Below, in pieces: positions 1 through 57,370 of a DNA stretch of 64,000 nucleotides. The number at the start of each line of letters is the position of its first letter. Position 1 is the stretch's first letter. The position numbers were made by a program, and so were the translations under genes. Source of the DNA: Asterias rubens (Eukaryota); assembly GCF_902459465.1 (NCBI RefSeq), contig NC_047074.1:1426001-1490000 (forward strand), given 5' to 3'. The notes under the pieces were generated by a model. It was not told the DNA's origin and did no database searches. It saw only the letters and a list, made by a program, of their open reading frames with translations.

Positions 1-1081
1 ATCATCGTTATACTGTGCAAGTTTTATGTAACTTTGTGATATTGAACCATTTTTATCTTACCCTGTCCGTTATGTTCCTTTAATCTTAGAGGGTATTGCC
101 TCGTCTAACAGTTTGGGGGTTAAAGTTCACAGAGTCTAGCTTTCATTGAAATAAGCTGCAAATGGTGGTGGGGGAATAGCCACTTGCAATAAATAAAGAG
201 GTGTTCATTTTTTTTTTTTTTTTTAGTAGCGGAGTTATTACTCCAAGACGTTTAATATCGGTATTACATGAGAGAGGTGTGTGCAGTGTAACAGTGCCAT
301 CACTGACTTTCGACCCACCTATAGCTGAAGACAAATCCGACTAAGTCTAGACAATGTTCTGGGTAGGATTTTGGAGGATTTGGTATGCGTGTTACGGCAA
401 ACCTGTTGAGGGAATTTGAGGCCATACCAAGATTGGCAGCTGCGGCCAAGACTGTTGCGTACCAGTTTGTACCTTATGCATTGACACCATCCAGCCATCT
501 TAGAGCTAATCTGATGATGAAAACAATCAAAAAGCACATTATTATTTGTATGCATGGCGCACATGATTTGCCAATGAACAGCCTCCTTTTGACGAGGGCG
601 CCCTACTCAATGACAACATGTGCGTAAGTTCTATTGAGAGAGTTGCGACATTTGTGCTCTATTTGGACCGAAATGGTGTCCAGCAACCAATTGTCCGAAG
701 ATTTCACCAAACTCATCCTAACCTAGTAAGACGAGTTAAGTTCCCTATCTGAAGACGTAGGACGCATTGAACCCATCCTAGGTTAGGACGAGTTATTCGA
801 GATGGGATTTAATCCTAGGGTTTCGTGAAATCGCCCGCTGGTAGCTCAGGAAGAAGTTGTTGTTATTAACATTCTGAAGTAATAGTTGGTTTGAGGGATT
901 TTATAATTAAATGGAACAGTGCGAGACTGTGGTTTGTGATAGTCAGGCCTATTTTTCTTAATTATATATAAACATATTTTTTCATTTCTTTTTGTGTTGG
1001 TTGTAAAATGTTTATGTATTTTAATGTAACTTTCTTTCTGTGTGTAGAGAGCCAAAATGGTCATTTGAACTTCATTGTTAA

Positions 1082-1454
1082 AGGCACTGGACACATTTGG
1101 TAATAATATTGTGAAAGACCAGCCTTCTCACTAGGTGTATCCCAATATATGCAGAAAATAACGAACCTGTGAAAATTTGGGGCTCAATTAGTCATCTTAG
1201 TTGCAAGAAATTAGTTTAGAAATGCCCTTATTGCACAATTGTGTGTGCTTTCAGATGCCTGAAAAATGCTTCAAGCCTGAAGTCTTATGTCAGATTCAAA
1301 TATTTGAGTGAGAAATTACCTCTAACTACGCTACTTCAGAGGGAGCTGTTTCTTGCAATGTTTTATTCTACCGACAGCTCTCGGTTGCTTGTTGCCAAGT
1401 AAGTTCTTATGCTAATAAATATTTTGAGTAAATACACATCAGTGTCCAGTGCCT
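1082..1454. mobile_element. Non-autonomous TTAA-TSD DNA transposon (Kolobok-like MITE, family A)
   Basis: TIRs AGGCACTGGACAC/GTGTCCAGTGCCT flanked by TTAA at 1078-1081 and 1455-1458. The same internal sequence recurs many times in the window. TTAA TSD with purine-purine 5' termini fits Kolobok rather than piggyBac. Confidence 0.8.
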
Positions 1455-2092
1455 TTAAATGCCAAAAACTGTGATAAAACTATGACATAATGTGCAAAAG
1501 TCTGCGACAAAAGGAATATAGTATTGGTCCCACTGCATTTATATTTCCATATTGTATAAACACTTAGCATGTTTGTTTTTTCACACAAAAAAAGGATTTG
1601 TGTGTTAATGTCTTTGAGACAAAGTTACTTTGTAGATTTGTAAACATTGGCACAGTTTCGCTTTGAGTGTTAAAGCACATGTACATATGACATGTTTGGA
1701 TGAATTTTAAATATGTTTTTCCTTTTGGAATATTTCATAGTTGTTAAAGTCTTTTGAGGTATTAGGATTGGGGTTGTAGCGAGGGGGTGTCTAGCTTTTG
1801 GGACGCAGAAGTTTTTTATGTTCAATTTCAAACTCTGGATGCCTGTTGGTTCATTCCTACAGAATAAATGACAAATATTTTGTGCCGCTGTCAAGATCGG
1901 CTGTGTGCACAGCAATAAACTTGGCCTTGTCCGAGGGCTCTTTACTGCAGGCGGTACTTGATGTACCGTTTACCGTGGGGCTGAAGCATGGTTTTTTAAC
2001 CTCGTACAATGAAGAAGCAAAAACCATTCTTTGACCCCGCGGTGTATCAAGTACTGCAGTATCCTGTCCAGTACTGTGATTCATGCTACCTG

Positions 2093-2337
2093 GGCCCAAT
2101 TTCATTGCTCTGCTTACCGCCGAGTTTTGCAATTACGATCACGATTTCCCGCTTACGTGTAAGCGCCGAATTTCTGCGCTAGCCTTGTAAGCGTAGAATG
2201 CCTAGTAACGTTGAGTACGCACGCGCAGAAGCCAAAATCACCTAACCCAAGAAATACGCTTGCCGTAAGCACCGAATGCCCTGCTTCCGTAAGCGCCGAT
2301 TCTGTGTTTACGGTAAGCAGAGCCATGAAATTGGGCC
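2093..2337. mobile_element. PIF/Harbinger-like MITE with CWG TSD
   Basis: TIR GGCCCAATTTCAT/ATGAAATTGGGCC with 3-bp TSD CTG at 2090-2092 and 2338-2340. Related copies lie at 23837-24021 and 55274-55437. Confidence 0.75.
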
Positions 2338-2738
2338 CTGGTGACATTGAAAGCGGGTGCTTGTGTTAAGAACCTTTGGGACAAGACTACAACAGACTTG
2401 GCTAGCCTTACTGAGATTGCCTCTGTGACAGTAACCTGTTAGTCCAAAACTGTTGTAACATGCTTGAGTCGTCAGGGCACCAGTTTCATAAGCCTGTAAG
2501 CACATTAATGTCTTGCTTAGCAGTTAACCTGCCAGTATTACACTTATTGTGCATTAGGTGACTGGTGCCCCACCCAATATTTTGCTTAGCAAAGAAAGTT
2601 GTCAAGCAGTATATTTTGCCTAACAGCTTTATGAAATTGGGCCGAGAGTGCATGAATTGGAACAATGTAAATGGTTAACGGCATACAGCACTTAACGGAT
2701 TTGTGTATAGACCATCATTAAGTAACATAAGATCTTAA

Positions 2739-3059
2739 AGGCACCGGACACAATTGGTCATGTGAATGTGTGAAAATTTTTACTCGATTGGTCATCAAAG
2801 TTGCATGAGAATATTAATGCAAGAAAAGAGACTCTTGTAGCACAAAATGTGTGTGGTTTCAGATGCCTAAAAGGGGCTTATGGCTTGAAGTCTTAATATT
2901 TGAGTAAAAAAATATCTCTTTCTCAAAGACAATGTTACCTCAGAGGGAGCCGTTTCTCACAATGTTTTATACTATCAACAGCTTTCCATTGCTCGTTACC
3001 AAGTGTATGTTTTTATGCTAACGGTTATTTTGAGTAATTACCAATAGTGTCCAGTGCCT
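2739..3059. mobile_element. Kolobok-like MITE family A copy
   Basis: TTAA-AGGCACCGGACAC ... GTGTCCAGTGCCT-TTAT; same body as 1082-1454. Confidence 0.75.
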
Positions 3060-3642
3060 TTATTTATCAAGTCTGATCTGTGTATTTATTAACATTTGAA
3101 AATAAAGAGCTAAATAAATACAATCTGCAGTTTTTGGCTTTCATTATTTGGTCTTTGAGGCAGTTATATTCCCTACCGAACCCCTGGACTTGCTGTCTAT
3201 AAACAACAGTAATTATTAAAATGACACTTCTGTATCTTTTAAATTAGTCATTACATGTACACTAAATACTAAGCTTTTCATTTTGGCCAAAATGAGAAAC
3301 ACTATCGATCATTTTCTGCGATTAAAACTGATTAAAAGTTTAAGGAACGCCTTGCATTTTTATCAAGTTCTCCTTGAAATAGAAAGGATAACACTAAGAA
3401 GCTTTGGTTTGGTTTTTACCGAAGTTTGTAAAGAAAAGCTCTTTATACGATATTTTTAAGACGAAGTGAAGAGGCTATGCATGACGTCACCACCATCTAA
3501 GACCTTTTGGGATCACACACAAAAAACTTTTATAATCTTGAATAAATAAAAAATGATTTGAAATTATTCCAACTATAGGCCTAGTTCCGGGAAAAATTTG
3601 GGTTAAATAATAAATTAATTATGTGAATTGTAACTATCAGAT

Positions 3643-3720
3643 GGCGCCTTAGCTGTGCGACGTAGGCGTTGGATTGGGAGCCACGAGACCCCGGTTCAAC
3701 TCCCGACGTGTTCTGTTTTT
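3643..3720 (+). ncRNA. tRNA-derived Pol III-type module 1 (left arm), not a canonical tRNA
   Basis: GGCGCCT-TAGCT A-box start, B-box GGTTCAACTCC at 3693-3703, T5 run at 3716-3720. The mirror copy 7881-7957(-) begins GCCCGGTTAGCT, resembling tRNA-Lys 5' ends. The cloverleaf is incomplete. Confidence 0.45.
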
Positions 3721-4281
3721 CTTTTTCTTTTGACGCCGCTGTGGATTATTTAAGTAGTATTAAAATCATCTCCAAACACCAGCGGGCACTGTGGCGACAC
3801 GGTGTACTGGATAGTTCCATTGTGCGTGCAATCCAGAGCTGGGACACCGGTTCGAATCCTACCCGTACCAAGAGGGACATGACTTTTACTGTTAGCACCA
3901 GTAATGGATTGGGGTCCGTCATGTCTATCCCCAAATTAGGTGTGGATGATTTACCGTGTGGGAGAGTAAAGGAGGGACCGGGACTGCCAGTCCCTGAAGG
4001 GTTCTAATGGGTGATCACCACGCTGGTTTCGACCAGACTTTGAGTCCCCTGAAAGCCTGGTCGACACTCTGACTAACTCTTTGCACAAATTTGCTTTAAT
4101 TTAAATTAATTTAAACAATTTATTAAATCTTAATGTAGGTACCTCGACAGCTTTTGTTAACAATCAGCTTAGTCCATTTTGGATAAAGTCACAAGGATAA
4201 GCCCTGCAACTTATCCATTTATTATTATTATTTTTTATTAAGTCAAAAGGAGTAAACGTTGCAATTTGGTAAATTTTTGAC
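3678..4281 (+). repeat. Left arm of long inverted repeat
   Basis: Reverse complement of 7320-7923 (coordinates sum to 11601, no indels seen). Only two mismatches noticed (3689, 4238). The ORF track shows mirror-image ORFs 3746..3934(-)/7667..7855(+). Confidence 0.97.
3793..3887 (+). ncRNA. tRNA-derived Pol III-type module 2 (left arm), not a canonical tRNA
   Basis: A-box-like GGTGTACTGG at 3801-3810, perfect B-box GGTTCGAATCC at 3849-3859, CCA at 3868-3870, T4 at 3884-3887. Identical mirror copy at 7714-7808(-). Confidence 0.45.
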
Positions 4282-7200
4282 CTATATAGCCTTTTGATTT
4301 TTTTTAAAGTTCACAAGGCATAATGATTTTTTCGAAAAGTTCACAAGGCTATATAGCCTAATGACTTTGTTGAAAAGTTCACAAGGCTATAGCCTTATGA
4401 TTTTTCGAAAAGTTCTTAAGGCTATATAGCCTTATGATTTTTTGGAAAAGTTCACAAGGCTATATAGCCTAATGATTTTGTTGAAAAGTTCACAAGGCTA
4501 TATAGCCTTATGATTTTTTCGAAAAGTTCACAAGGCTATAGCCTTATAATTTTTTCGAAAAGTTCACAAGGCTATAGCCTTATGATTTTTTCGAAAAGTT
4601 CACAAGGCTTTTTTTTCGAAAACATCACAAGGCTATATAGCCTTGTGAACTTTTCGAAAAATCATAAGGCTATAGCCTTGTGAACTTTTCAAAAAAATCA
4701 TAAGGCTTGTGAACTTTCCCAAAAAATCATGAGGCTATAGCCTTAAGAACTTTTCGAAAAATCATAAGGCTTTTCCTTGTGAACTTTTCGAAAAAATCAT
4801 AAGGCTATAGCCTTGTAAACTTTTCCAAAAAATCATAAGGCTATAGCCTTGTGAACTTTTCAAAAAAATCATAAGGCTTTTCCTTGTGAACTTTTCCAAA
4901 AAATCATAAGGCTATAGCCTTGTGAACTTTTCGAAAAAATCATAAGGCTATAGCCTTGTGAACTTTTCAAAAAAATCATAAGGCTATATATAGCCTTGTG
5001 AACTTTTCCAAAAAATCATAAGGCTATAGCCTTGTGAACTTTTCGAAAAATCATAAGGCTATAGCGAACTTGTGAACTTTTCGAAAAATTATAAGGCTAC
5101 AGCCTTGTGAACTTTTCAACAAAATCATTAGGCTATATAGCCTTGTGAACTTTTCCAAAAAATCATAAGGCTATAGCCTTAAGAACTTTTCGAAAAATCA
5201 TAAGGCTATAGCCTTGTGAACTTTTCAACAAAATCATAAGGCTTGTGAACTTTTCCAAAAAATCATGAGGCTATATAGCCTTGTGAACTTTTCGAAAAAT
5301 TATAAGGCTATAGCCTTGTGAACTTTTCAACAAAATCATTAGGCTATATAGCCTTGTGAACTTTTCCAAAAAATCATAAGGCCTTGTGAAGTTTTCGAAA
5401 AATCATAAGGCCTTGTGAACTTTTCCAAAAAATCATAAGGGTATAGCCTTGTGAACTTTTCCAAAAAATCATAAGGCTATATAGCCTTGTGAACTTTTCG
5501 AAAAATCATAAGGCCTTGTGAACTTTTCCAAAAAATCATAAGGCTATAGCCTTGTGAACTTTTCGAAAAAATCATTAGGCTATATAGCCTTGTGAACTTT
5601 TCGAAAAATCATAAGGCTATAGCCTTGTGAACTTTTCAAAAAAATCATAAGGCTTGTGAACTTTTCCAAAAAATCATAAGGCTATAGCCTTAAGAACTTT
5701 TAAAAAAAATCATAAGGCTTTTCCTTGTGAACTTTTCCAAAAAATCATAAGGCTATAGCCTTGTGAACTTTTCGAAAAAATCATAAGGCTATAGCCTTGT
5801 GAACTTTTCGAAAAATCATAAGGCTATAGCGAACTTGTGAACTTTTCGAAAAATTATAAGGCTACAGCCTTGTGAACTTTTCAACAAAATCATTAGGCTA
5901 TATAGCCTTGTGAACTTTTCCAAAAAATCATAAGGCTATAGCCTTAAGAACTTTTCGAAAAATCATAAGGCTATAGCCTTGTGAACTTTTCAACAAAATC
6001 ATTAGGCTATATAGCCTTGTGAACTTTTCCAAAAAATCATAAGGCTTGTGAACTTTTCCAAAAAATCATGAGGCTATATAGCCTTGTGAACTTTTCGAAA
6101 AATTATAAGGCTATAGCCTTGTGAACTTTTCAACAAAATCATTAGGCTATATAGCCTTGTGAACTTTTCCAAAAAATCATAAGGCCTTGTGAACTTTTCC
6201 AAAAAATCATAAGGCTATATAGCCTTGTGAACTTTTCCAAAAAATCATAAGGCTATAGCCTTGTGAACTTTTCGAAAAATCATAAGGCTATAGCCTTGTG
6301 AACTTTTCCAAAAAATCATAAGGCTTTTCCTTGTGAACTTTTCCAAAAAATCATAAGGCTATAGCCTTGTGAACTTTTCGAAAAAATCATAAGGCTATAG
6401 CCTTGTGAACTTTTCCAAAAAATCATAAGGCTATAGCCTTGTGAACTTTTCGAAAAATCATAAGGCTATAGCGAACTTGTGAACTTTTCGAAAAATTATA
6501 AGGCTACAGCCTTGTGAACTTTTCAACAAAATCATTAGGCTATATAGCCTTGTGAACTTTTCCAAAAAATCATAAGGCTATAGCCTTAAGAACTTTTCGA
6601 AAAATCATAAGGCTATAGCCTTGTGAACTTTTCAACAAAATCATTAGGCTATATAGCCTTGTGAACTTTTCCAAAAAATCATAAGGCTTGAGAACTTTTC
6701 CAAAAAATCATGAGGCTATATAGCCTTGTGAACTTTTCGAAAAATTATAAGGCTATAGCCTTGTGAACTTTTCAACAAAATCATTAGGCTATATAGCCTT
6801 GTGAACTTTTCCAAAAAAACATAAGGCCTTGTGAACTTTTCGAAAAATCATAAGGCTATAGCCTTGTGAACTTTTCGAAAAATCATAAGGCTATATATAG
6901 CCTTGTGAACTTTTCAAAAAAATCATAAGGCTTGTGAACTTTTCCAAAAAATCATAAGGCTATAGCCTTGTGAACTTTTCGAAAAATCATAAGGCTATAG
7001 CCTTGTGAACTTTTCCAAAAAATCATAAGGCTATAGCCTTGTGAACTTTTCGAAAAAATCATAAGGCCTTGTGAACTTTGCAAAAAAATCATAAGGCTAT
7101 AGCCTCGTGAACTTTTCGAAAAAATCATTAGGCTATATAGCCTTGTGAACTTTTTTCCAAAAAATCATAAGGCTGTAGCCTTAAGAACTTTTCGAAAAAA

Positions 7201-7319
7201 TCATAAGGCTATAGCCTTGTGAACTTTTCAACAAAGTCATTAGGCTATATAGCCTTGTGAACTTTTCCAAAAAATCATAAGGCCTTGTGAACTTTAAAAA
7301 AAATCAAAAGGCTATATGC
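4282..7319. repeat. Minisatellite of ~28-38 bp quasi-palindromic units (about 85-90 copies) with internal polarity switch
   Basis: Typical unit GCCTTGTGAACTTTTCGAAAAAATCATAAGGCTATA (36 bp). Orientation flips near 4630. A variant marker GCGAACTTGTG recurs at 5064, 5829 and 6471. Confidence 0.97.
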
Positions 7320-7923
7320 GTCAAAAATTTACCAAATTGCAACGTTTACTCCTTTTGACTTAGTAAAAAATAATAATAATAAATGGATAAGTTGCAGGGC
7401 TTATCCTTGTGACTTTATCCAAAATGGACTAAGCTGATTGTTAACAAAAGCTGTCGAGGTACCTACATTAAGATTTAATAAATTGTTTAAATTAATTTAA
7501 ATTAAAGCAAATTTGTGCAAAGAGTTAGTCAGAGTGTCGACCAGGCTTTCAGGGGACTCAAAGTCTGGTCGAAACCAGCGTGGTGATCACCCATTAGAAC
7601 CCTTCAGGGACTGGCAGTCCCGGTCCCTCCTTTACTCTCCCACACGGTAAATCATCCACACCTAATTTGGGGATAGACATGACGGACCCCAATCCATTAC
7701 TGGTGCTAACAGTAAAAGTCATGTCCCTCTTGGTACGGGTAGGATTCGAACCGGTGTCCCAGCTCTGGATTGCACGCACAATGGAACTATCCAGTACACC
7801 GTGTCGCCACAGTGCCCGCTGGTGTTTGGAGATGATTTTAATACTACTTAAATAATCCACAGCGGCGTCAAAAGAAAAAGAAAAACAGAACACGTCGGGA
7901 GTTGAACCGGGATCTCGTGGCTC
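7320..7923 (-). repeat. Right arm of long inverted repeat
   Basis: Reverse complement of 3678-4281. Confidence 0.97.
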
Positions 7924-8701
7924 TCAGTCAACGTCCACGTCTTTTAGCTAACCGGGCATGTAATACAAGTTGACGCATAATTAAAGAAAAATACAATTTT
8001 GTTGTAACCAAACCAACTATATCCCGCAACTATAGGCCTATAGTTGGAATTCTTTTAAATAACGGAGTATTATAATATAGTTGGAGTTAATACCAATCGT
8101 TTATGGTGTGATTCCAAAACCATCCGATGGTGACGTTGTGCATCACTTCGTCACTTGTCTTCACTTTTATTTTAATGAACTCTATCATGGAGTCTGTAGT
8201 TAAACTCTTAAAATATTCTTTATTAACTTGTTTGACTTAAGTCTCTAAATTAGTTATTCAATAATTTATCACTTTCAACTGTTTTCTGATAACTTTCTGA
8301 ATGGATACAAAGGGACTCAAAACTCCTGAATTCAAAACAAAATCAGTGATTTTAGAGTTATTAATTTATGACTCGGAAAGGGTATAGTTTCTCATTCGTC
8401 TGCTGATTGGAATGTAGTTCAAAACTTTAAATATTCAACTTTTGAGCTGAAACAACTCAACATTAATGACACAGAAAACAAAATTTATTTTTACTCAAAA
8501 TTTATTATTCTAGTAATGATATAAGTAATTATACAGTCAAATATATATTATTTAATATTTATTTTAATGAGATGTAAAACTGAAGAAAAAAACAATTGCA
8601 AAGAAATTTGTGTTAAAAGGTACATTTATATACATTTTGAAAATAACTCTTAAATTTAATAGCAATACAAACTTATGGTTAGAGGCCTACAGCTGCTTTC
8701 A

Positions 8702-8848
8702 ATAGGAGACTTTACAACACTAGGTGGCAGCAGACATACCGGGTAAATTTCCATTGTTTACGTAGTTCTGAACATGCGCATAATTCTGAGAACAATGGAT
8801 TCACCCGGTAAGTCTGCTGCCCTCCATCGTCCCAGAAAGTCTCCCATA
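8702..8848. mobile_element. Small MITE (ctaggtggcagcagac family)
   Basis: Imperfect TIRs ataggagacttt...ggcagcagac / gtctgctgcc...aaagtctcccata. Fragments also near 28560, 52680 and 54800-54890. Confidence 0.6.
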
Positions 8849-9384
8849 GCATTCGCTTTGAGGGAATGTCATGAATGTGGTTACATGTATGTACATGTAT
8901 GTGAACAATTATCAGTTGTTAGTGCCACCAAATTTGAATTTGAGAAGCATTACTGTCAGTAACGCTTCTCAGATTGTGTACTCTTCTCATTAAGAATTAT
9001 TCTTCCTTCGTCGACATAACCGCTGCGGATTTTCCTCGATAGTATCTAAATTTTGAATAATCATATTAAGGGATAAGCCTAGATTTTCCCCCACCAGTAT
9101 CAACCAGGCATGCAACTCGTACCTCACCAAAAAAGAGGAAATTACAAAATGTCAATGATTTTATTTAGTATTTTTCAATTTTGAATGAAAAAACTAAGAC
9201 TAAAAAGAGAGGAAATCAGCTTCCGAGGAAAAATTGCACGCCTGATCAACCAAAAGATGAACAAACCACAAGAGGTAGTTGCCTTGAATTGTTCAGATTT
9301 TGATAAAAGGCCACTGTCTCAAAAGAGGATAGCTTGAATATATCAACCACCGACCCCCTCCGAAACTGGCTAACAATTTCAGCT

Positions 9385-10434: not shown

Positions 10435-11739
10435 CTAAAACACTTGAATTACGACCCCAAGCTTAATTTTCCCGCTCTTCTTGTCCAGGAAAGCTTGGGA
10501 ATGGACCGTCGTTACGTTTGTCGTTAAACTCCAATGCACGTTAGCCGTTGGTCCATCGGGCTTATAGACAAGACCGCCTTTAGTTACCGCATTCATGAAA
10601 GCATCGCCTGCGTCAAAGGCTGTGATGGCTAGGCGAAAAGATTTCCCTATGTCGCCATTCGGGGCCTGAAGCTTATAGGTGACATTAGTCAGCGTGCCCT
10701 TTTCGCAAGTGATGTCGTTGAAGTTATTCTGCTGTAGAAGGAGCAGGTACCAAGGTGAACCACTCTTTGGCCGGTAACCCTGGGTCATAGCGTTAGCCAT
10801 TATCGTACTCGTTGGGTGGACGTAAATCACGTGACAATGCGGAGGCGCGAGGTAGAGTCTCGCCAAGAAACGCTCTGCAGAGAAGATCTCTGACATATTC
10901 CCCGAACTGGCCAAGGCGTGAAATTTATACCCTTCTAAGATGTAGTCCTTAAGTTGCTTCTCGTAGATCTGACCGAACTCTGACTTCTCGATGATGTGAA
11001 TCTGCTCCGAGGTCATCTGCGCGAAGCGCACCGTGGGAAGAAGCCGACGTAGATTGGTCGTCACCCCGCCCTTCTGCATGTCGTGGATCAACCATCTCTC
11101 CATAGCCTTAAAGAGCGAAAACTCATCATTGACAATAAGCTGCGGACTTTCCAAGAGCCGACACATCTGATCGACGGTCAAACCTAACCATGACTCATTC
11201 GTTAAAATCTTCGGTAGATTACTCGCGATGACCTCATAGCAGTGCATCACAAGTTGATCTAGAGAGTATGTTTCCGCAAACGAGAGCCAGTTGAGGGCGC
11301 CCTTCACATTCCCCTGACCAATCTGCTCAGTCATGTACTGCTCACACTGACACCGAAGCCTGTGTATATTATACTTGTCGGCGAGCGTGAAAATCGGCAT
11401 GATGGTTCGTGTGTCCACTGTCACCTCCCCGCAGTACAGATATCGTAGAAACTCCCCAAAGACTGCTACACACTCGGTGCTTTCCTCCAAGATGATTTCT
11501 TGCTGTTGGGAGTCGAGCCACTGCGATCCGGTCAGCATGGTCTGGAAAACATCGCTCGCTGACGCCAGAAAGAACTTGTGGCAGTTGAAGGTGGATCCGT
11601 CGACTCGGATGATGACGTCACTCAGTTCTGGATTGTTGTAGTGAGATGCTATCCCTGTGACAAACTCACTGACTGATCCTAGTTTGGTGGAAAAATTGGC
11701 CTCCATTTTGATGTTTTTTTCAGCAGTGGCAGCCATCAT
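10435..11739 (-). CDS. BTB/POZ-BACK domain protein (BTBD17-like CUL3 adaptor type), 434 aa, intronless CDS
   Basis: ORF has SDVIIRVDGSTFNCHKFFLASASDVF (BTB), FLRYLYCGEV, LADKYNI, and a BACK-like region with LLPTVRF. A splice acceptor (ttatttcag) ends at 11746, just upstream of the ATG. Confidence 0.9.
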   Translation of the reverse strand: MMAATAEKNIKMEANFSTKLGSVSEFVTGIASHYNNPELSDVIIRVDGSTFNCHKFFLASASDVFQTMLTGSQWLDSQQQEIILEESTECVAVFGEFLRYLYCGEVTVDTRTIMPIFTLADKYNIHRLRCQCEQYMTEQIGQGNVKGALNWLSFAETYSLDQLVMHCYEVIASNLPKILTNESWLGLTVDQMCRLLESPQLIVNDEFSLFKAMERWLIHDMQKGGVTTNLRRLLPTVRFAQMTSEQIHIIEKSEFGQIYEKQLKDYILEGYKFHALASSGNMSEIFSAERFLARLYLAPPHCHVIYVHPTSTIMANAMTQGYRPKSGSPWYLLLLQQNNFNDITCEKGTLTNVTYKLQAPNGDIGKSFRLAITAFDAGDAFMNAVTKGGLVYKPDGPTANVHWSLTTNVTTVHSQAFLDKKSGKIKLGVVIQVF

Positions 11740-18411: not shown

Positions 18412-19500
18412 TCAGTTCTTCTTGACCGGTAGAGAGACAAATGGTAGAATACCCTGCAGCTGGTAGAAAAAAAACACAACAATGTATTTGAATGAGGGCC
18501 AGTTGGAGGGTTATTCACATACACTGGACACCTTTGGTAATTGTCAAAGACCACTTTTTTCACTTGGCTAATTGGTGTATAGAAGAGGTTTCTGCAAAGT
18601 ATAGGAAGATGATATGCATAAAGTATTACAAACCTGTGAAAATTTGAGCTCAATCGGTCATCGAAGTTGAAAGAGAATAGTGAAGGAAAAATAACCCTTG
18701 TTGCACAATTAATTTGTGTGCTTTCGGGTGCCTAAAAATTGCTTCAGGCCCAAAGTCTTTTAATATTCGAGTGAGAAATGACCGCTTTCTCAAATACTAC
18801 ATTACTTCAGAGGGAGCCATTTCTCACAATGTTTCAGACAATCAAAAGATATCCATTGCTCGTAACCAAGTAAGTTTTTATGCTAACAATTATTGTGAGT
18901 CATTTAATACCAATAGTGTCCACTGCCTTTAAGCTTCTCTAAGCATGTTCAAAATTTAAATTTAATTTGAAGGCAATTTAAACAAATGAAGAAAATGTGT
19001 GTAAGACTCACCCAAACTGTTGGATTGCGCTTCAGGTATTGGTTTCGTAAATGGCAACTGTGGAGATAAAAAATTATATATTCATATTAAATTCTCAATA
19101 AATAACTAAATTCTAGTGACAATGAACATCGCTTGATTCATCAATAATTTATGTCCTTAGGTAAGACACTTTGTTTACATGATTTTATAGAGGTTATAAT
19201 TGCTGGCACATTTTAGTGAACCAATTCAAGGTGTTGTGAGCAAGCATGGCCTGCTAAAAAAAAATAGCGCCGGGCACGGCAAGATTGATTATCCCAGAGA
19301 ACGAGGTAGGCCATGGCCCTTTCTTCCCCTGGTCTTGGCCTTGGTGCCCCTTCATAAGTTTCCCTCAGACTTTAAGATTTTTCAAAAGAAAGAGCTGTTT
19401 GCCAAATGAACATGGCCTTGCCCTCTTAACGATGGAATTCTAGGCCTAACAGCTAACACCTTTGTTTTACCAATTAAATCCGTATTTTCACATCTTCATC

Positions 19501-27600: not shown

Positions 27601-30600
27601 TTAGTCAACATGACCGTTTTGCTTGACAGTTACAAGTGGTAGACATCCAATATTCTGAAGAAAAAGAAATACATAAATAAATAAATAGAAATCAGAATCT
27701 TTTTAAAATAACTTTTTTTAAAGTTTTTCCCAAGAGAATAATTATTTTTAATCTTTTGGTGAACCCCGGGGACATAAAAATGCACACATTGAAAGTAGTT
27801 TTGATTGGCTGCCCCTAGCTAGATGCATTGGTGTCAGTGCTGGGGAAGTTTGCGTTTGATTCGCTCGTTTCTCGTGCTCACCAGTAATCGAATGCACCCA
27901 GTGTTTATTGCTAGCCCTGCCTCACAAGTATGAAAAAGCAGTTCAATCGCACAGTTGGAAATGATTTAGCCACCAATTGCGAACACCTCTTCAAATGAAT
28001 TTCTACTTACCCAAATCTCAGTGTGCTGTTTCAGAAATCTGCAGCGGGCATGAAAACTGAAAAGAGTAAGATAAAGAAAGAATGTGATAGAACCTTCTTT
28101 TTCTTGGGGGGGAGGGACAAAGCAGTAACGATAAAGTGTCTCGCAAACTCTGTCGATCTGAAATGCCAGCAGACCGATTTCACAAACGACTGTAAAAGTC
28201 CACTAGTTCAAGATTGCTTGTGTTAGTGGGAACAACTTAGGCAATGAAGCAGTTGCCAAGAAGTTTTGTGAAATCGGCAACAGAACTTGAGGTCAGTGCC
28301 ATTGACTGCTCGACCACGGCAAAACAAAAACTTATCGTTACTTTCTAAAGTGTACAGTAATGGCAGCACTAGCAAAGTAAAGTAATATTAGGCCGTATCC
28401 GAACTGGCAGCTACAGCTAAGGCTACGACTGTTGCTAAGGGTGTTGCTAAGGACATCCTATACTTCAACGCATGATGACGCAGAAATCTAGCCACAGCCA
28501 CATGTAGCTGCTAATTCCGGCTTGGCCTTACTTTTTCGTAGTTCTGAGCATGTGCACATTGTGACCAAGTCTGCTGCCACCTAGCGTCTTAAAAGTCCCC
28601 CATTGGAAATCCTTATGCAGTAGGCGGATGATTAAACCTGGCCTACCTAAACATGATTTGGCAGTGCGTTCCAAGTGCCGCCAAGATGTGCCAGTAGGCA
28701 TGAAGCTGCAAAAACACATCAAGTGGGGTCGGAATGAAAGATCTCATGTACCTTTTCAGAAAAACAAAACAATTAAAAAAAAAGTAGGATTTGAAACTTT
28801 GCATTGTGGTAATACGCTATAGTAAGGTTTGCTGTAACACCATGTAATGATAATCTCTAATGAGTTTGGGTGGTTTTAACAATAATAAGCGTAGGTTTCA
28901 ACTCGACTTTTCTATAGGTATGCCCTGATCGTCCTCGGGAGACGGCTGTGTGACCTATTAAATTAACCGGAACTACTACTTTTGCTTTGATGGATCTTGG
29001 GGACTTCTCGTTTTTAACTACCGCGGAGAAATCAAGTTCTTTATTGAGAAATAAACTTACTTTAGTTGGTCACAGAAAGCGTTGTCGATATTCCACAGAA
29101 GAAAAGCCAACAAATAGAGGAAGATGGATAACAGTAGAAGTCTCGGAGAGAATTCTTGCTCACTGAAACAACAAATTGTTTTTGTTTGAATGCACTGGAC
29201 ACTTTTGCTAATGACTCAAAACAAATATTAGCATAAAATCTTACTTAGTCACCTGCATGGAGAGCTTTTGATACTATGAAGTAACGTAATTTTTGACTGG
29301 CACTCCAAAACAAAGAAATTGGCTAATAGGTAGACCGCCAACAAGGACAGCTCAGTTGGTAGAGGCCTTTACCATGGCCTCTGCCATTGCTTTGGTATAA
29401 TTCCAGTCCTGATAATTAGTGTTGTGTTAAACTGAACATTTCTGGGGAAAGACTCCCTCTGAAGATTTTTGACGCACCTGTAATAGAAGCAGTAGGTCCC
29501 TCTGCATACCGTCATTAAAACGAGGCCGCCATAAGCAGCCTGGCAAAAAAAAGTACAAAGAAATAATACGGATCGTTAAAGACATGAAAGGGAGAGCGAG
29601 ATGCACCATAGAAGATTCTTTCAGAGTCAAGATGTATGTTTCTGGAATATATTGTCAACAGTTGTGCTATGACTGTGACGGTGCACTTACACATCCATTG
29701 AGATACACCAAGTGAGAAGACGGGTCTTTGACAACTACCAATATTGTCCAGTGTCTTTAACAATTTTTTGCTTAGCAGAAATGTTCAGGATACCAGTCAC
29801 ATATTTTACATGTGAAATGGCATTTTGGCCGGTAACCTTAACCTGGTAAGCATTGGGCGCGAATCCCAATGTTATGGGCACTGGTGTGCATTTCAATCTA
29901 CTTATAGATATAGATTATTATTGTCTCTTTTTCTTGAAAGAAATTGAAAGCTGTTGACGTACCTGGTGTATAACTGGATCCTTAGTTAATGTGTAGATGC
30001 CGGTAACAGACACTGCATAAAGCAGTAGAATTACCATCAGCTTATAGTTGGGACTGTTGGGTTTGGAGTCAGTCTCAAAGCTGTAGAAGGTCAATAAAAG
30101 TTTAGAAAAACCTAGGAATGTCCTGCTAGAAGTTCTAGCCAGGAATCGACCAAATCACACACACATAAAATCCATTTTATGATTGCTTCTAAATGAGTTA
30201 GAGCCCTGGAAGCTCAGTGTTGATAGTACAAAAACATTGTGATTAATGGCAGTTTTTGAATAAGAGGTAATTTCTCACTCAAATATATAAAAGCACACAA
30301 ATTTGTGCGACAAGGGTGTTTTTTTCTTTCATAATTCTCTTTCAACTTCGATGACCAATTGAGTAAAAATGTTCACAATTTTTTTTTTTACCAAAGGTGT
30401 CGGAGTCTTTAAACAAGGTTTTGAACAAAAGTGTCAACTTACAAGCTGTACAGCAAGATGCACGTTCCCCAGATCATTGGTAGTTCATCAAATAGCTGAA
30501 ATTAACAAAAACAAATTCCTTAATGATCGAGCTTTATGCTTTGGGTATACAAATTTGGTTTTGTATCCCTGGTTGAATAGCTCTTAGAGGCCCAATAGTA

Positions 30601-38511: not shown

Positions 38512-39568
38512 ATTTAAGATGATACTTATGCGATTGTTGTAAATATTCGTGAGTAAGTTTATGTTAATTTGTTTTGATAATATAAATAAATCATAGTCCG
38601 TGTCCGGATTAGCGGCTAGTTAGTGCTATGGCTAGAGTTCCGAGTCATCATGCGTTGGAAGTATGGGATGTCATTAGCAACACACTTAGCAACAGTCGTA
38701 GCCAATACTGTTGCCGCCAATTCGATACGGCCCAATATAATAGCTCAACGGCCCAACAGCTCTCCCATATGCTAATCTAATAATGTTTATATGCACAAAT
38801 TGGTGCACTAACTCATTTGCATGGGTTAACAAGTGAATATTTATTACCAAATTTGCATAGTTGGACTCTGAGCATTATTTGAAATTATTATACTAAGAGG
38901 TGTAAAACTGTTTATATTTTTGTAATGTAGTTATTTGTAATGTGTTTCATGTGTATATTTCAAGGTTTAGAAACAGATTAAACTGTATTTGAGGTAAGGT
39001 AAATCATAAAGAAAATACTGCATTTCTGTTTGTTTTCTAGGCTTTTCACGTATCAAAGTATTTGAATATTTTCCTAGAACGATTTGTATTTGAGGAACTG
39101 CAGCAATTTAGAAGAAATGGAAGCGGGAAGTTGTGTCGCTATATAAATTAGAATTTGAACATGTCTAATCATAGAACGAAACTGAAGTGCTTTACTTTTA
39201 AACACATTTTGTTGTAAAAAATAAGATATTCATTTTGTTTTAAAGTGTATGTGAAATTGTGGAATTGTTATTGGCATTGTACTTACGTAAGGTTGTAAAT
39301 TATGTTAAGAAGATAGTATTATTTATTGTCATTTATTAAAGTACTGCAAAGCGGTTGTTCAGTATAGAGTTTAAATTTAAAACCAAAGTCAAACAAACAA
39401 CTTGTAGATGTACATAATATTATAATTAGACTATTTATTTGAAGTACAAAGTAATAAGAGAATTTGATTGCTTTATATATATATAGAAGAGTTTGCGGTA
39501 ACACCATGTAATAACAAGCTCTAAATGAGTTGGGGTGGTTCTGAAAAGAACCGTTGGATTAACTCGAC

Positions 39569-40393
39569 GTTTCGATCAGTATGCTCTGATCGTCTTCTGG
39601 ATTGCTTTAGTTAATATTGTTGTGTTTCGATCAGTATGCTCTGATCGTCTTCTGGATTGCTTTAGTTAATATTGTGGTGTTTCGATCAGTATGCTCTGAT
39701 CGTCTTCTGGATTGCTTTAGTTAATATTGTTGTGTTTCGATCAGTATGCTCTGATCGTCTTCTGGATTGCTTTAGTTAATATTGTGGTGTTTCGATCAGT
39801 ATGCTCTGATCGTCTTCTGGATTGCTTTAGTTAATATTGTGGTGTTTCGATCAGTATGCTCTGATCGTCTTCTGGATTGCTTTAGTTAATATTGTTGTGT
39901 TTCGATCAGTATGCTCTGATCGTCTTCTGGATTGCTTTAGTTAATATTGTTGTGTTTCGATCAGTATGCTCTGATCGTCTTCTGGATTGCTTTAGTTAAT
40001 ATTGTGGTGTTTCGATCAGTATGCTCTGATCGTCTTCTGGATTGCTTTAGTTAATATTGTGGTGTTTCGATCAGTATGCTCTGATCGTCTTCTGGATTGC
40101 TTTAGTTAATATTGTGGTGTTTCGATCAGTATGCTCTGATCGTCTTCTGGATTGCTTTAGTTAATATTGTTGTGTTTCGATCAGTATGCTCTGATCGTCT
40201 TCTGGATTGCTTTAGTTAATATTGTTGTGTTTCGATCAGTATGCTCTGATCGTCTTCTGGATTGCTTTAGTTAATATTGTTGTGTTTCGATCAGTATGCT
40301 CTGATCGTCTTCTGGATTGCTTTAGTTAATATTGTGGTGTTTCGATCAGTATGCTCTGATCGTCTTCTGGATTGCTTTAGTTAATATTGTTAT
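39569..40393 (-). repeat. 55-bp tandem array (~15 copies) derived from a hammerhead-ribozyme-like repeat
   Basis: Unit GTTTCGATCAGTATGCTCTGATCGTCTTCTGGATTGCTTTAGTTAATATTGT(T/G)GT. The minus strand reads CAGAAGA-C-GATCAG-AGCATA-CTGATC-GAAAC. Confidence 0.95.
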
Positions 40394-41370: not shown

Positions 41371-46844
<5,474 letters not shown>

Positions 46845-51478: not shown

Positions 51479-54400
51479 ATGACAACGGAGGAGGCGCCCG
51501 TGGGGTCCGTCGAAGCGGAAGGACGGCCTGACTGTTGGGAGAGGTTTGACGCCTACCGGAAAGAAGTCTACGCCCAGCCCGATGGCGGTCAAGGACTCGT
51601 AAAACTTTACGACAACTTCTCTGAAAATTATAATAAGGCAGGTGTTCATAATGAGGGTACATGATGGAATGTTTGTATTAATGTAAAAAACCAATCATAA
51701 TGGCGTTTTCAGGGATATAGGCCGGTCGGTGTCAAGTGTCCGGCGGAGATGCTGTCCCCCATAATGGACAAAATTAATGTGGGCTGTTTCAAAAGAGGGC
51801 GCTATTATCAGAAGTAGTTTGTACACAGGTTTTTACCCAACCCAAATCCTCCTTATAGAGCTAACACAATTCTAGACTGGTTCCCTGTCTTTATCTGCAA
51901 GGATAAGGACAGGTGTTGGCTTTATCACCTACACATACGTCGTATTTAACTGCGAATCTCCAGAACCATGCATGAAAGCCATGTGAAAACGGTGCGGGGT
52001 TAAAGATGATTCATGGACGTTGCTCAACGGTAGATCTCTGGCGCAGTTAACGGTCATCGAAGTGTGACGTCAGAACCTCCCCATTGAAAAGCACTACGAC
52101 AGTGGCAATTTGATCCACAAACGAAAACGAATTGCGTTCAGGCTACCAAAATCCGTTCACCTTTTCCTCTTTTGTTTCTACTTTTTGTCCTCGTTTTCTT
52201 TTTGTATCGCAGGACTCCGTGGCTATGGGGTACTTGGGACCTGCTAACCTGGCCGCTGTGGCATCGGAGTACGTCACCGATAAGGGAGCCAGGATTCTGG
52301 ATGCGGCTTCCGGTGCAGGAATGGTTGGAGAAGAGGTGATAATTTATTATAGACTGGTCCCATGTCTTTATGCGCTAGGATAAAGACAGGTACTTGCTTT
52401 TCAGAACCAGCGATTTCATTGGGTAAAATGATTTCATTGGCTAAACGTGCAGTGATGTCAGCATTCTGTATCTGTATTTTGATTGGTCCGAAGTGACATT
52501 TTGGCAGCTGCACTTGCGGTCGTCTGCATAATTTTGTGAATCTAGGAGAAAGGTGAAGATGGAAGGGGATTGACCTACAGAGGTCACTCTCTGGCGTTAT
52601 TCACGAGCCTCGAAGTGTGACGTCAGATGTTTAGGCTAGTGAAAAATAACACGAAACACTAAACACATGTTGAAGACTTTTGGACGCTAGGTGGCAGTAG
52701 ACATACTCAGCAATTTTGTAAGGTATCTTCATTATATAATTATGCGGCTCAGGACAAGCTCGACATCTGAAACCAAGGTACTCCTGAGTCGTTCCAAACG
52801 ACTGCAACATTCGATCTTTCGACTCCAGACCAGCATGTCCAGTTGCTCCTTACTGTTTCAGACGTCGAACTTTTCATTTTAAATGTTCATTTTAGTTAGG
52901 CGCCTGTAGCTGTGTCTGGATCGGATTAAGCTATAGTAAACGAAAAGAGTGTGTTTTTGTGTCTCACTTTTGTTCGTCATTTTTTGTTTAAAAAAAAATA
53001 ATAGTGTGGACTAGGAAATAATCGGCAGTTTGTAATACATGAGTTTTTCTTCACTATCATCGAATGAACACTCACGTCTTCCATTTTATGTAAATTAGCT
53101 AAAGGGGCGTGGCTTTACCTGTGTGGACGCCTTGGACCCATCCCAGGATTCACTTGACTATAGCAAACGTCATCATTCCTACACCGAGCATATGCGATAC
53201 ATTGGATGAGCACCAGACTAAAATCAAAGATGGTCAGTAACAAATTTATGGTGCATAACAAAAAATCTGTTGTGCAAACGAAATAAAAAAATCTGAGAAG
53301 AATTGTCTGTGAGTCCAAAGTAAGAATGGCAGTGATGGAGACTAGACAAAATCATGGTTTGAATAATCAAGAAGCCACTAAAACAAACGAATTAAAGTAT
53401 AAAAATTGAAAATAGCACAATCATTTATCGTTTGTCTCCCCTTTAAACACCTTTTTGGTGTCCCGTACAAATATTGTTGCCTGCCTGAATTTTGATGCAC
53501 ACATTGTGTTACCGCAAACCTACAATTAAAGTCTGTTTGATTTTATAGATCAATATGAGGCCGTTGTGATGTGTGGCGCGTTTGGTGTTCCTGGTCACGT
53601 GACTGACATTTGCTTCCCCGAGATCATCCGCATCATAAAACCAGGTAAACGAACATTATTTCAAAATCAACCCCCAATCATGAAAGATGGCGCCATTCTA
53701 AAAAGAAGGACCATTTTTGAAGGGAGGCTTCGTGACGCAAAAGTCAAAGCTCAAGTTTTTGCCAAGCCCAGGTTGAAAACTCAACATGCAAAGCAAAAAA
53801 CAGATGGTCACAGTTTTTGACAATCTCACACAACTATTCAAAACAATAGTGTTTGTCAATTTTTACGTCACGAGACACTTCAATACACCATAGTCATTGC
53901 CCACCCGAACATCGAGAGCACTAGTCCATTGCCTACCCGAACATCGAGAACACTTGTCATTGCCAAGCCTACCCGAACATCGAGAGCACTAGTCATTGCC
54001 TACCCGAACATTGAGAGCACTAGTCATTGCCTACCCGAACATTGAGAGCACTAGTCATTGCCTACCCGAACATTGAGAGCACTAGTCATTGCCTACCCGA
54101 ACAATGAGAGCACTAGTCATTGCCTACCCGAACATTGAGAGCACTAGTCATTGCCTACCCGAACATCGAGAGCACTAGTCATTGCCTACCCGAACATTGA
54201 GAGCACTAGTCATTGCCTACCCGAACATCGAGAGCACTAGTCATTGCCTACCCGAACATTGAGAGCACTAGTCATTGCCTACCCGAACATTGAGAGCACT
54301 AGTCATTGCCTACCCGAACATTGAGAGCACTAGTCATTGCCTACCCGAACATTGAGAGCACTAGTCATTGCCTACCCGAACATCGAGAGCACTAGTCATT

Positions 54401-56029: not shown

Positions 56030-57044
56030 TTAAATATAAAGAAATGTACTATCTAGTTGTGTATAATACCAATGGCTGTTTTGATGATCGAATGACCTTG
56101 CAAGGGTTTGAACCTTGGCCCCTTGCATTATCTCATCAACCAATGGAAATACAAAACGTGTTTTACACGCAACCATAACTCTCAGCCAATGGGTCTTTCA
56201 TTGACCTCATCATTGAGGGCGCTGTTTGAGCATATGAACGGGAAAATCGCACACTTTCGGGTCTCACTTTTAAAGTTCGACTATGCATGAAACTCATTAG
56301 GCCTAGAACACCTTTTCACTCATTTTGTGACATTAACTGCTCAATGGGAACCAGTTATTTACAAATAAGAGGTAAAGCCGACACCTGTTGCATGCACCCA
56401 TGAAGGGGGGGGGGTGGTGGCTTGGCACGAATTGATCAATTTGTAACTAGAATATAGTCAGCGCAAATGACACGAGTCTGGACTAGTATTATTTTCTTCA
56501 ATTTTAGGCTTTTTCCCAAACCTTCGCCCAATTATTGTTGTGAGGGAGGGGGCAGCAAGGACGCGCCACTCAAAACCCCTGCCCCATCCCCCATCCCCCA
56601 TCGCGTCCTAAAATCAGATAAGAAAAACACAAATGAATGAGTTGATACTAGCACCCCATCCAATTATGACCTTTCCTCTGCTTGCCCCCACCCCCTAAAA
56701 AAAGAGAAAAGTTACTGGTCACACCACTATTTACGTTTTAGATCTAAAGGACAACCTAAACACCTAAACACAACCCACATGTTAGCCTTGTTCTACCTTT
56801 ATATGTAAAACAGTGACATACTAGTCATACAAGAGGCTTTGACACAGGCTAGTAAATATTCATAGCAACAATTATTATAAAGTTATTCCCTGAGAAGATC
56901 ATGGAGATCGTTTTCAATGTCAATCAATCGCCAAATATAACTTTTTATGACATAATATCTGGCCCTACATGTACATTAACACTGATATCCTAGAAATGGT
57001 ATTACACAAGTATTGACTAGGAGCATAATATTAACTGAATTTAA

Positions 57045-57370
57045 AGGCAGTGGACACTTTTGGTTATTACTCAAGTAATTGTTAGCATAAAAACCTTACT
57101 TGGTAACAAGTAATGGAGAGCTGTTGATAGTATAAAACATTGTGAGAAACAGCTCCATCTGAAGTAACGTAGTTTTCGAGAAAGAAGTAATTTTCGATGA
57201 ATTTGATTTCGAGACCTCAGAATTAGATTGAGGTCCCGAAATCAAGCATCTGAAAGCACACAACTGCGTGTGACAAGGGTGTTTTTTTCATCCATTATTA
57301 TCTCGCAACTTAGATGACAAATTGAGTTCCAATTTTCACAGGTGACAATTAACAATAGTGTCCAGTGTAT
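57045..57370. mobile_element. Kolobok-like MITE family A copy
   Basis: TTAA at 57041-44 and 57371-74 with family A termini. Confidence 0.75.

What the first reader, a model, noticed from the sequence alone, without database searches (positions are those of the whole stretch)
3460..8152. ~4.5-kb palindrome: near-identical arms with Pol III-type modules enclosing a hairpin minisatellite
Seen: 604-bp arms (3678-4281 and 7320-7923) differ at only two positions I could find and contain no credible ORF. Each arm carries two tRNA-like A/B-box modules pointing inward, then a structured GC-rich segment (about 3890-4075). About 3 kb of self-complementary repeats lie between the arms. No TSD or transposase was seen. 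Known: foldback elements (Drosophila FB, sea-urchin TU) have long inverted arms containing tandem repeats, but usually with the tandem domain outermost; here unique sequence is outside and the array inside. Inference: either an undescribed foldback-type mobile element carrying its own Pol III promoters, or a pair of convergent small-RNA genes kept identical by arm-to-arm conversion, able to form a giant hairpin, cruciform or dsRNA.
Basis: partly seen in the sequence, partly recalled or inferred. Interest (0 to 1): 0.85.

Follow-up and report, generated by a model that had tools for sequence, protein, structure and literature searches.

The report
Old SINE-and-minisatellite palindrome in a starfish
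A 4.7-kb inverted duplication in a sea-star genome, made of a SINE-like repeat and its hairpin-forming minisatellite, is real and older than the species. Copying between the two arms keeps them alike, and their 430-nt core changes more slowly than the neighbouring protein-coding gene.

Summary
Arms 3672-4405 and 7196-7929 differ at 9 of 734 positions, and at only 2 within 3678-4281. About 84 copies of a 36-bp quasi-palindromic minisatellite lie between them.

The genome is an Asterias-type sea star. The arms are copies of a low-copy, modular, tRNA-related SINE-like family, and unpaired copies of it occur in marine metagenome contigs.

This palindrome is not a transposed foldback element:
- It has no TSD.
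- It includes about 210 bp of locus-specific flank on each side (3460-3671 and 7930-8152), now about 24% diverged.
- Its right arm and array sit at the orthologous site in A. amurensis.

The array flips orientation once, inside a 24-bp perfect palindrome (4625-4648) that is the core of one monomer. This fits a hairpin-mediated fold-back. Later block duplications made the array lopsided.

Outer arms group by orthology, and inner tails group by species, so arm-to-arm conversion has acted. The core (3672-4100) shows 3 mismatches in 429 nt between species. It is the slowest stretch in about 12 kb of aligned orthologous sequence, slower than the BTB coding exon, which suggests constraint. Its function is untested.

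Earlier notes of this scan (unchecked) describe similar SINE-head and palindromic-satellite structures elsewhere in this genome.

The parts
3460..3671 (+). Outer, diverged part of the left arm: locus-specific flank plus the 5' (A-box) half of tRNA-like module 1, which starts at about 3643
   Evidence: It aligns to the reverse complement of 7930-8152 with 153 matches, 39 mismatches and 51 gap columns (JC 0.24). The local score is 62, against a maximum of 26 in shuffles. No similarity remains beyond 3455 / 8160.
3672..4405 (+). High-identity left arm (the conversion tract)
   Evidence: 734 nt, 99% complementary to 7196-7929, with 9 mismatches.
3643..3735 (+). tRNA-like module 1, with a B-box-like motif at 3693-3703 and T-runs at 3716-3733
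   Evidence: Read from the sequence; B-box scan. Present in family copies L001, L003, L004 and L008, and absent from L002. ARAGORN and Rfam do not call it.
3760..3887 (+). tRNA-like module 2, the head of the SINE-like unit, with a perfect B box at 3849-3859 and TTTT at 3884-3887
   Evidence: The solitary copy L002 begins matching at 3760. ARAGORN at 80% threshold calls 3796-3870. B-box scan.
3888..4127 (+). GC-rich body, the conserved central domain of the repeat family
   Evidence: Shared by L001, L002, L003, L007 and L008 at 85-95%; L004 lacks it. About 85 nt are nearly invariant among copies, and a UUCG-type hairpin carries one compensatory change. RNA fold z = -2.4.
4128..4281 (+). AT-rich tail with a hairpin motif (about 4176-4222) that resembles the minisatellite monomer
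   Evidence: The tail motif aligns to the monomer with score 27, above all 500 shuffles (max 25). The motif is duplicated again at the A. amurensis junction. DNA hairpin fold.
4282..4636 (+). Minisatellite, arm-proximal orientation (GTTCACAAGG type), 8 monomers
   Evidence: Marker counts; TRF.
4625..4648 (.). Axis of the palindrome: a 24-bp perfect palindrome that is the extended core of one monomer
   Evidence: It is the longest perfect palindrome in the switch zone, centred at 4636/4637. The 49-nt DNA hairpin folds at -18.9 kcal/mol, z = -10.
4637..7319 (-). Minisatellite in the opposite orientation (at least 58 monomers), enlarged by recent block duplications
   Evidence: Marker counts. 5723-6022 matches 6365-6664 at 99%, and 5207-5411 matches 6652-6856 at 98%.
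7196..7929 (-). High-identity right arm, the mirror image of 3672-4405 with the same modules
   Evidence: It is orthologous to L005 14448-15080 in A. amurensis.
7930..8152 (-). Outer, diverged part of the right arm
   Evidence: 7.6% mismatch to its A. amurensis orthologue, against about 20% to the left outer arm.

Best explanation
This is an old, locus-specific inverted duplication, not a transposed unit.

Proposed history:
1. A copy of a modular, tRNA-related SINE-like repeat lay next to a 36-bp minisatellite. The repeat has two tRNA-like modules, a conserved GC-rich body and an AT-rich tail.
2. The minisatellite monomer carries a 14-16-bp perfect palindrome and appears to derive from a hairpin motif in that tail.
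3. A fold-back occurred at the hairpin of one monomer, by strand switch or a hairpin-capped break. It copied the array, the SINE copy and about 210 bp of ordinary flank in inverted orientation.
4. This happened well before the split of the window's species from Asterias amurensis.
5. Since then, arm-to-arm gene conversion has kept the inner 734 nt nearly identical. The outer flank escaped conversion and diverged.
6. The array has changed length freely: about 3 kb here and at least 6.1 kb in A. amurensis, with recent 640-800-bp block duplications on one side only.
7. The 430-nt core of each arm (3' half of module 1, module 2 and body) evolves several-fold more slowly than its surroundings, so it is probably under selective constraint.

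Shown: the structure, the age relative to speciation, the concerted evolution and the slow core. Inferred: the fold-back mechanism, the origin of the monomer from the tail, and constraint as the cause of the slow core.
For: Structure.

Axis: it lies exactly in a monomer core, a 24-bp perfect palindrome that forms a strong DNA hairpin.

Locus-specific outer arms: they are similar to each other (score 62 vs max 26 in shuffles) but not to the flanks of family copies L003 and L004. Similarity ends at 3455 / 8160.

No TSD.

Orthology: the BTB gene, right flank, right arm and array are collinear in A. amurensis L005.

Age: JC distance for left outer vs right outer arm is 0.24, against 0.08 for right outer vs its A. 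amurensis orthologue.

Conversion: the tail 4101-4281 differs at 1 site between arms but at 8 of 181 sites (4.4%) between species.

Slow core: 3 of 429 mismatches between species. The median 429-nt window has 16. Only the arm core (minimum 2) and part of the BTB coding exon (minimum 4) reach 4 or fewer, across about 12 kb of aligned columns from 11 blocks that span about 13 kb of the window. The CDS differs by 1.9% and its third positions by 3.9%.

Array dynamics.

SINE-family nature of the arm: copies in unrelated contexts are L002 (starts at 3760), L007 (starts at 3855), and L003 and L008 (full head).

Monomer-tail similarity.
Against: - The age of the palindrome therefore rests on the distance of the outer arms, not on direct observation.
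- Only one genome per species was compared, and one 64-kb window of the host genome. Genome-wide copy number and possible shared termini could not be checked.
- L004 shows the same satellite on both sides of a head in inverted orientation. Unchecked scan notes report similar structures elsewhere in this genome. The combination therefore recurs, which could also mean mobility.
- The slow core could reflect ectopic conversion from conserved family copies, or a local mutational cold spot, rather than selection.
- The monomer-from-tail similarity is short (about 28 nt).
Confidence: 0.62

Rival explanations
1. It is a non-autonomous foldback-type DNA transposon (like FB, Tetris, Galileo or TU). Its long inverted terminal repeats hold a unique outer domain and an inner tandem array, and it inserted here as one unit.
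For: The overall layout matches Tetris, which has a flanking domain outermost and tandem repeats inside (PMC4079207). The association of head and this satellite recurs in L004, with inverted satellite on both sides. Unchecked scan notes describe similar palindromes elsewhere in the genome.
Against: - No TSD at any plausible boundary.
- The outer 200 bp are 24% diverged from each other, and were not found next to the family copies compared (L003, L004).
- There is no second copy in the window or in 42 kb of related loci.
- The structure is fixed at the orthologous site in a species said to have split about 28 My ago (PMC11090083).
- No transposase is nearby.
Confidence: 0.13
2. It is a functional locus retained by the host. 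One version is a pair of convergent Pol III (SINE-derived) RNA genes or TFIIIC-binding boundary elements bracketing a satellite. The other is a hairpin-RNA source whose inverted SINE arms yield small RNAs against the SINE family, in the manner of maize Mu killer. This reading is compatible with the structural history above; it adds a function.
For: - The arm core is the most conserved stretch in about 12 kb of aligned orthologous sequence. It is slower than the adjacent coding exon, while the tail in the same conversion tract diverges at a neutral-like 4.4%.
- Perfect or near-perfect B boxes and T-runs lie inside the conserved part.
- A small hairpin in the body keeps pairing through a double change among family copies.
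Against: - There are no expression, small-RNA or ChIP data.
- The A-box half of module 1 is not conserved between arms or between species.
- There is no Rfam match.
- Fold z is only -2.4.
- The conservation rests on a single pair of species.
- A TTTT at 3884-3887 would stop Pol III before the conserved body.
Confidence: 0.22
3. It is an assembly artefact: a fold-back chimera in long reads or in the assembler.
For: Near-identical inverted arms around a repeat array are a typical shape for such artefacts.
Against: - The two sides are not mirror images. The outer 210 bp differ by about 20% plus indels.
- The arrays on the two sides of the axis differ 8-fold in length.
- The arms carry private differences.
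- An independent HiFi assembly of A. amurensis has the same right arm joined to the same satellite (PMC11090083).
Confidence: 0.03

Closest known systems
Foldback transposons with modular TIRs (Drosophila FB; Tetris of D. virilis, PMC4079207; Galileo; sea-urchin TU)
   Same: Long inverted arms with a unique outer domain and an inner tandem-repeat domain, no coding capacity, and a link between the element and satellite-like arrays.
   Different: No TSD, and no shared termini at other loci were seen. The arms are a SINE-like retroposon copy plus ordinary flank. The whole interior is a single array that flips once, with no distinct middle domain. The locus is orthologous between species rather than polymorphic.
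Large sex-chromosome palindromes of primates and mice kept by arm-to-arm gene conversion (PMC8327919, PMC8981503, PMC3723533; abstracts seen)
   Same: Arms about 99% identical through conversion, conserved across species, with an unstable interior. PMC8327919 likewise argues that selection preserves palindrome arms.
   Different: The scale is 10-1000 times smaller: 0.7-kb converted arms. There are no protein-coding genes in the arms, the spacer is a minisatellite that is itself inverted, and the chromosome type is unknown.
SINE- or other TE-derived tandem repeats (review PMC9659126: Xenopus satellite 1, Hydromantes Hy/Pol III, the mouse B1-derived VNTR)
   Same: A tandem array associated with a tRNA-related SINE-like element. 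The monomer resembles a motif of the element's tail.
   Different: The repeated unit here is not the tRNA-related head. It is a 36-bp hairpin unit next to the tail, and the array is folded into a palindrome.
Hairpin-primed fold-back inverted duplication at DNA breaks (yeast; PMC11724301, abstract seen)
   Same: The inversion junction lies exactly at a short pre-existing inverted repeat, here the monomer core.
   Different: That work reports very short templated inverted duplications (mostly about 5-34 bp). Here the event is fixed in the germ line, kilobase-sized and tens of millions of years old. The mechanism is inferred, not observed.

Membership tests
Foldback (FB-like) DNA transposon | Long terminal inverted repeats that contain tandem repeats | tested here: met
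   Inverted arms with inverted arrays. This is a structural resemblance only.
Foldback (FB-like) DNA transposon | Target-site duplication flanking the termini (8-10 bp in Tetris, 7 bp in Galileo) | tested here: not met
   A systematic scan of boundaries 3400-3680 / 7925-8230 found only an internal palindromic motif and a 5-nt AT-rich match.
Foldback (FB-like) DNA transposon | Several copies at different loci that share the same termini | tested here: inconclusive
   The outer arms are not similar to the flanks of L003 and L004, and there is no other copy in the window. The whole genome could not be searched.
Foldback (FB-like) DNA transposon | An autonomous partner or transposase | not testable with these tools
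   None is in the window near the element.
tRNA-derived SINE (the arm's 3643-4127 unit) | A tRNA-related head with internal Pol III A and B boxes | tested here: inconclusive
   B boxes are good. A boxes match about 6 of 9 specified positions by eye. ARAGORN at default and Rfam tRNA find nothing; ARAGORN calls the modules only at 80% threshold.
tRNA-derived SINE (the arm's 3643-4127 unit) | Dispersed copies in unrelated flanks, including 5'-truncated ones | tested here: met
   L002 starts at 3760, L007 at 3855, and L003 and L008 carry the full head. Flanks are unrelated.
tRNA-derived SINE (the arm's 3643-4127 unit) | TSDs around individual copies and a LINE-related 3' tail | not tested
   All metagenome contigs end inside the element. 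No partner LINE was available.
Genomic palindrome maintained by arm-to-arm gene conversion | Arms much more alike than the age of the duplication allows | tested here: met
   Inner arms differ by 1.2% over 734 nt, and at 2 of 604 sites within 3678-4281. Outer arms are at JC 0.24.
Genomic palindrome maintained by arm-to-arm gene conversion | Paralogous arms within a species closer than orthologous arms between species (concerted evolution) | tested here: met
   The tail shows 1 difference between arms against 8 of 181 to A. amurensis. The outer arms show the opposite grouping. Only one A. amurensis arm was available.
Genomic palindrome maintained by arm-to-arm gene conversion | Both arms present in the sister species | not testable with these tools
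   L005 ends inside the array, and no gene beyond it could be used to fetch more sequence.
Hairpin-RNA / Mu killer-like silencing locus | Read-through transcription and small RNAs from the arms | not testable with these tools
   No expression data were available.

The most novel reading that the evidence does not exclude
The palindrome is a host-retained functional element. Its inverted SINE-derived cores are under purifying selection for one of two reasons. They may give rise to hairpin or convergent transcripts that are processed into small RNAs against this SINE family. Or their paired B-box (TFIIIC) modules may act as boundaries around a hairpin satellite. Either would be a conserved, TE-derived regulatory palindrome in an echinoderm.
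Probability: 0.2. Interest if true: 0.75.

Novelty: new variant of a known kind. Interest (0 to 1): 0.5.

Why it matters
Small palindromes with hairpin-forming centres are expected to be unstable and short-lived. This one has persisted across a split dated at about 28 My (the estimate of PMC11090083), with three features that can be read directly from two genomes:
- The inversion junction lies in a monomer hairpin, which points to the mechanism.
- One locus shows both gene conversion (inner arms) and escape from it (outer arms).
- A TE-derived core evolves more slowly than a neighbouring coding exon.

If the constraint holds in more species, it marks an exapted SINE pair. It would also be a compact natural system for studying palindrome maintenance outside mammalian sex chromosomes.

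Tried and rejected
- tRNA or known-RNA identity of the arms: ARAGORN and Rfam (gathering threshold, and E<=10) found nothing.
- Protein-coding reading of the 112-codon frame: no Pfam match. Its only relatives are spurious ORFs on repeat copies or on tRNA-like arrays.
- TSD search: negative.
- Extension of homology beyond 3455 / 8160: none.
- Other copies in the window: none.
- JGI metagenome pattern scans for the head and for the monomer: both empty.
- Patiria miniata orthologous interval: no arm or array. This only shows that the structure is not alignable or not present at that depth.
- Relation of the 56-bp tail repeats of L001 and L008 to the 36-bp monomer: not significant, so the idea was dropped.
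- Shared upstream motif in L003 (TTCCAACTATA): not significant.
- Literature search for the body sequence: no paper contains it.
- The A. amurensis left arm could not be fetched, because no gene lies in window 1-3400.
- The 85%-identical BTB contig of a third species has no DNA on file.


Full report
**What is there**

The inverted-repeat search finds arms 3672-4405 and 7196-7929, 734 nt at 99% complementarity, 2790 nt apart. A base-by-base comparison gives 9 mismatches. Three lie at the outer edge (3674, 3677, 3689), one at 4238, and five in the first array monomers.

TRF finds a 36-bp unit in about 84 copies. The core AAGGCTATAGCCTT occurs 40 times in the window, all within the array, against none expected.

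Each arm has two B-box-like motifs pointing inward, followed by T-runs. The modules are only loosely tRNA-like. ARAGORN at default settings finds nothing, and Rfam finds no tRNA match in the left arm and its junction (3400-4400) even at E<=10. ARAGORN reports them only at 80% of its thresholds.

**Corrections to the anatomy**

First, the array is not one symmetric block. Orientation-specific markers show 8 monomers of one orientation at 4309-4598 and 58 of the other from 4641 to 7283. The single switch lies in a 24-bp perfect palindrome, 4625-4648, centred at 4636/4637. This palindrome is the extended core of one monomer. As single-stranded DNA, the 49-nt segment around it folds at -18.9 kcal/mol with z = -10.

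Second, the long side of the array contains recent block duplications. 5723-6022 matches 6365-6664 at 99%, and 5207-5411 matches 6652-6856 at 98%. These explain the lopsidedness.

Third, homology between the two sides continues outward from 3672 / 7929 to about 3460 / 8152, but at low identity: 153 matches, 39 mismatches and 51 gap columns, JC distance 0.24. It then stops; the score beyond the boundary is no better than shuffles.

**Whose genome, and what the arm is**

The single-exon BTB/BACK gene at 10435-11739 (minus strand) is 98% identical to BTBD17-like of Asterias amurensis. Its next-best matches are in other echinoderms. The window therefore comes from an Asterias-type sea star. I infer A. 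rubens, which has not been shown.

The 112-codon open frame in the arm has no Pfam match. I used it as a probe, and it retrieved spurious ORFs on short marine-metagenome contigs. Their DNA shows that the arm is a copy of a modular repeat family:
- L001 carries both modules and the body at 95%.
- L003 (89%) and L008 (85%) carry both modules and the body in unrelated flanks.
- L002 (94%) starts at 3760 and lacks module 1.
- L007 (92%) starts at 3855.
- L004 (85%) has both modules but no body. It is followed directly by a clearly related satellite (score 64 vs a maximum of 27 in shuffles) and preceded by a monomer of the opposite orientation.

Among copies, about 85 nt of the body are nearly invariant. 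A small UUCG-type hairpin keeps its pairing through one double change.

The arm is therefore a SINE-like retroposon copy: two tRNA-related modules, a conserved body and a tail. The family is low-copy in what I could see, with no second copy in the 64-kb window or in the two related loci.

**Not a transposed foldback element**

- The outer 200 bp of the two arms resemble each other (score 62 vs max 26) but not the sequence upstream of L003 or L004. L008 has an unrelated 62-bp satellite there, by eye. The inverted duplication therefore included ordinary local flank.
- A systematic scan found no target-site duplication.
- The structure sits at the orthologous site in A. amurensis. Locus L005 is collinear with the window from the ceramidase gene through the BTB gene and the right flank. 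It contains the right arm at L005 14448-15080, followed by the same satellite in the same orientation for at least 6.1 kb, up to the end of the fetched locus.
- The Patiria miniata interval between the BTB gene and TM9SF holds nothing alignable.

**Age and gene conversion**

For the outer arms, the window's right copy is close to the A. amurensis copy (JC 0.08). Both are far from the window's left copy (0.24-0.25). The duplication is therefore about three times older than the species split, which PMC11090083 puts at about 28 My for A. amurensis and A. rubens.

For the inner AT-rich tail (4101-4281 / 7320-7500), the grouping is reversed. There is one difference between the two arms of the window, but 8 of 181 sites (4.4%) differ from A. 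amurensis. This reversal is the signature of arm-to-arm conversion after speciation.

It also rules out an assembly fold-back. The two sides are not mirror images, and an independent HiFi assembly has the same arm-array junction.

**The slow core**

Between the two species, mismatch rates are:

| Segment | Mismatch rate |
|---|---|
| Right flank, three bins 8153-8999 | 7-13% |
| Outer arm | 7.6% |
| Tail | 4.4% |
| Core 7501-7929 | 0.7% (3 of 429) |
| BTB coding sequence | 1.9% |
| BTB third codon positions | 3.9% |

. One of the three core mismatches is private to the window's right arm.

I aligned 11 orthologous blocks, about 12 kb of aligned columns spanning about 13 kb of the window. The median 429-nt window has 16 mismatches. 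Windows with 4 or fewer occur in only two places: the arm core (minimum 2) and part of the BTB exon (minimum 4).

The tail lies in the same conversion tract and evolves at a neutral-like rate. Conversion alone therefore does not explain the slow core. Unbiased conversion does not change the neutral substitution rate; this is established theory and my own knowledge.

The most direct reading is purifying selection on the core. The alternatives are ectopic conversion from conserved family copies or a local mutational cold spot. The A-box half of module 1 is not conserved, so module 1 as a complete Pol III unit is not what is being preserved.

If the core is constrained, the coincidence between the edge of the slow core and the edge of the conversion tract is expected. 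Unconstrained sequence at the margin of a tract drifts out of homology until the tract edge meets sequence that cannot drift.

**How it most likely arose and behaves**

Inferred steps:
1. The tail contains a motif (about 4176-4203) that aligns to the monomer better than any of 500 shuffles. This motif is duplicated again at the A. amurensis junction. The minisatellite was therefore probably seeded from the tail.
2. Each monomer can form a small hairpin, and adjacent monomers form longer ones.
3. A fold-back at one such hairpin, of the kind documented at DNA breaks in yeast (PMC11724301, abstract seen), would place the inversion junction exactly in a monomer core. That is what is observed.
4. 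It would copy everything outward to 3460 / 8152.
5. Unequal exchange then changed array lengths independently on the two sides and in the two species.

**Recurrence**

L004 shows head and satellite combined in another inverted configuration. Earlier notes of this scan describe, elsewhere in this genome, a palindromic satellite enclosed by inverted tRNA-like modules, a palindromic minisatellite wrapped in tRNA-SINE arms, and a SINE head fused to a palindromic satellite. I could not read those sequences, so they remain leads. They fit either recurrent fold-back at a hairpin satellite or some mobility of the combination.

**Verdict**

The foldback-transposon reading is not supported for this locus. 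Arm-to-arm conversion is supported, and an RNA or other function is open but hinted at by the conserved core. It is a new variant of known kinds: a TE-derived satellite, a fold-back inverted duplication and a conversion-maintained palindrome. Interest is moderate.

Noticed in passing
window 39511-39557 (-): A histone 3' stem-loop at the Rfam gathering score (34.4 bits). It lies next to the region that an earlier scan note calls a 55-bp satellite (39563-40393).
   Followed up: no
window 52751-52840 (-): A tRNA-Cys(GCA) gene called by ARAGORN. At 90 nt it is longer than a standard tRNA, so it may contain an intron or be a SINE head.
   Followed up: no
window 1078-1458, 2846-3062, 18612-18932, 30279-30382, 41540-41862, 45000-45391, 57036-57343, 58010-58371: An abundant repeat of about 300-390 bp, unrelated to the palindrome arms, occurs in many copies in the window. 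It also occurs several times in A. amurensis L005, including insertions that differ between the two species (L005 690-980, 4548-4927, 7737-8164).
   Followed up: partly
L008 1-395: A family copy in a Mediterranean metagenome contig is preceded by about 6 tandem copies of an unrelated G-rich 62-bp unit. This is another repeat array abutting this SINE-like family.
   Followed up: no
L001 642-756 and L008 about 1000-1068: Two family copies share a different tail built from about 56-bp repeats (motif GCTGGACTTACCCCTTGTGATTTT). The family therefore has at least two tail types.
   Followed up: partly
window 8022-8041 and 3571-3586: The right outer arm holds a 20-bp perfect palindrome (CAACTATAGGCCTATAGTTG). 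The left outer arm has a shortened version. This mimicked a TSD in the automated scan.
   Followed up: yes
L005 15081-15214: A. amurensis has about 130 extra bases at the arm-array junction. They include a second copy of the tail motif TTTTGGATAAA(A/G)TCACA.
   Followed up: partly
L006 (Patiria miniata): The gene order ceramidase - BTBD17-like - TM9SF (EMP70) is conserved on the ceramidase and BTB side. TM9SF is the likely neighbour beyond the palindrome in Asterias, and could serve as an anchor for fetching the missing A. amurensis left arm.
   Followed up: no
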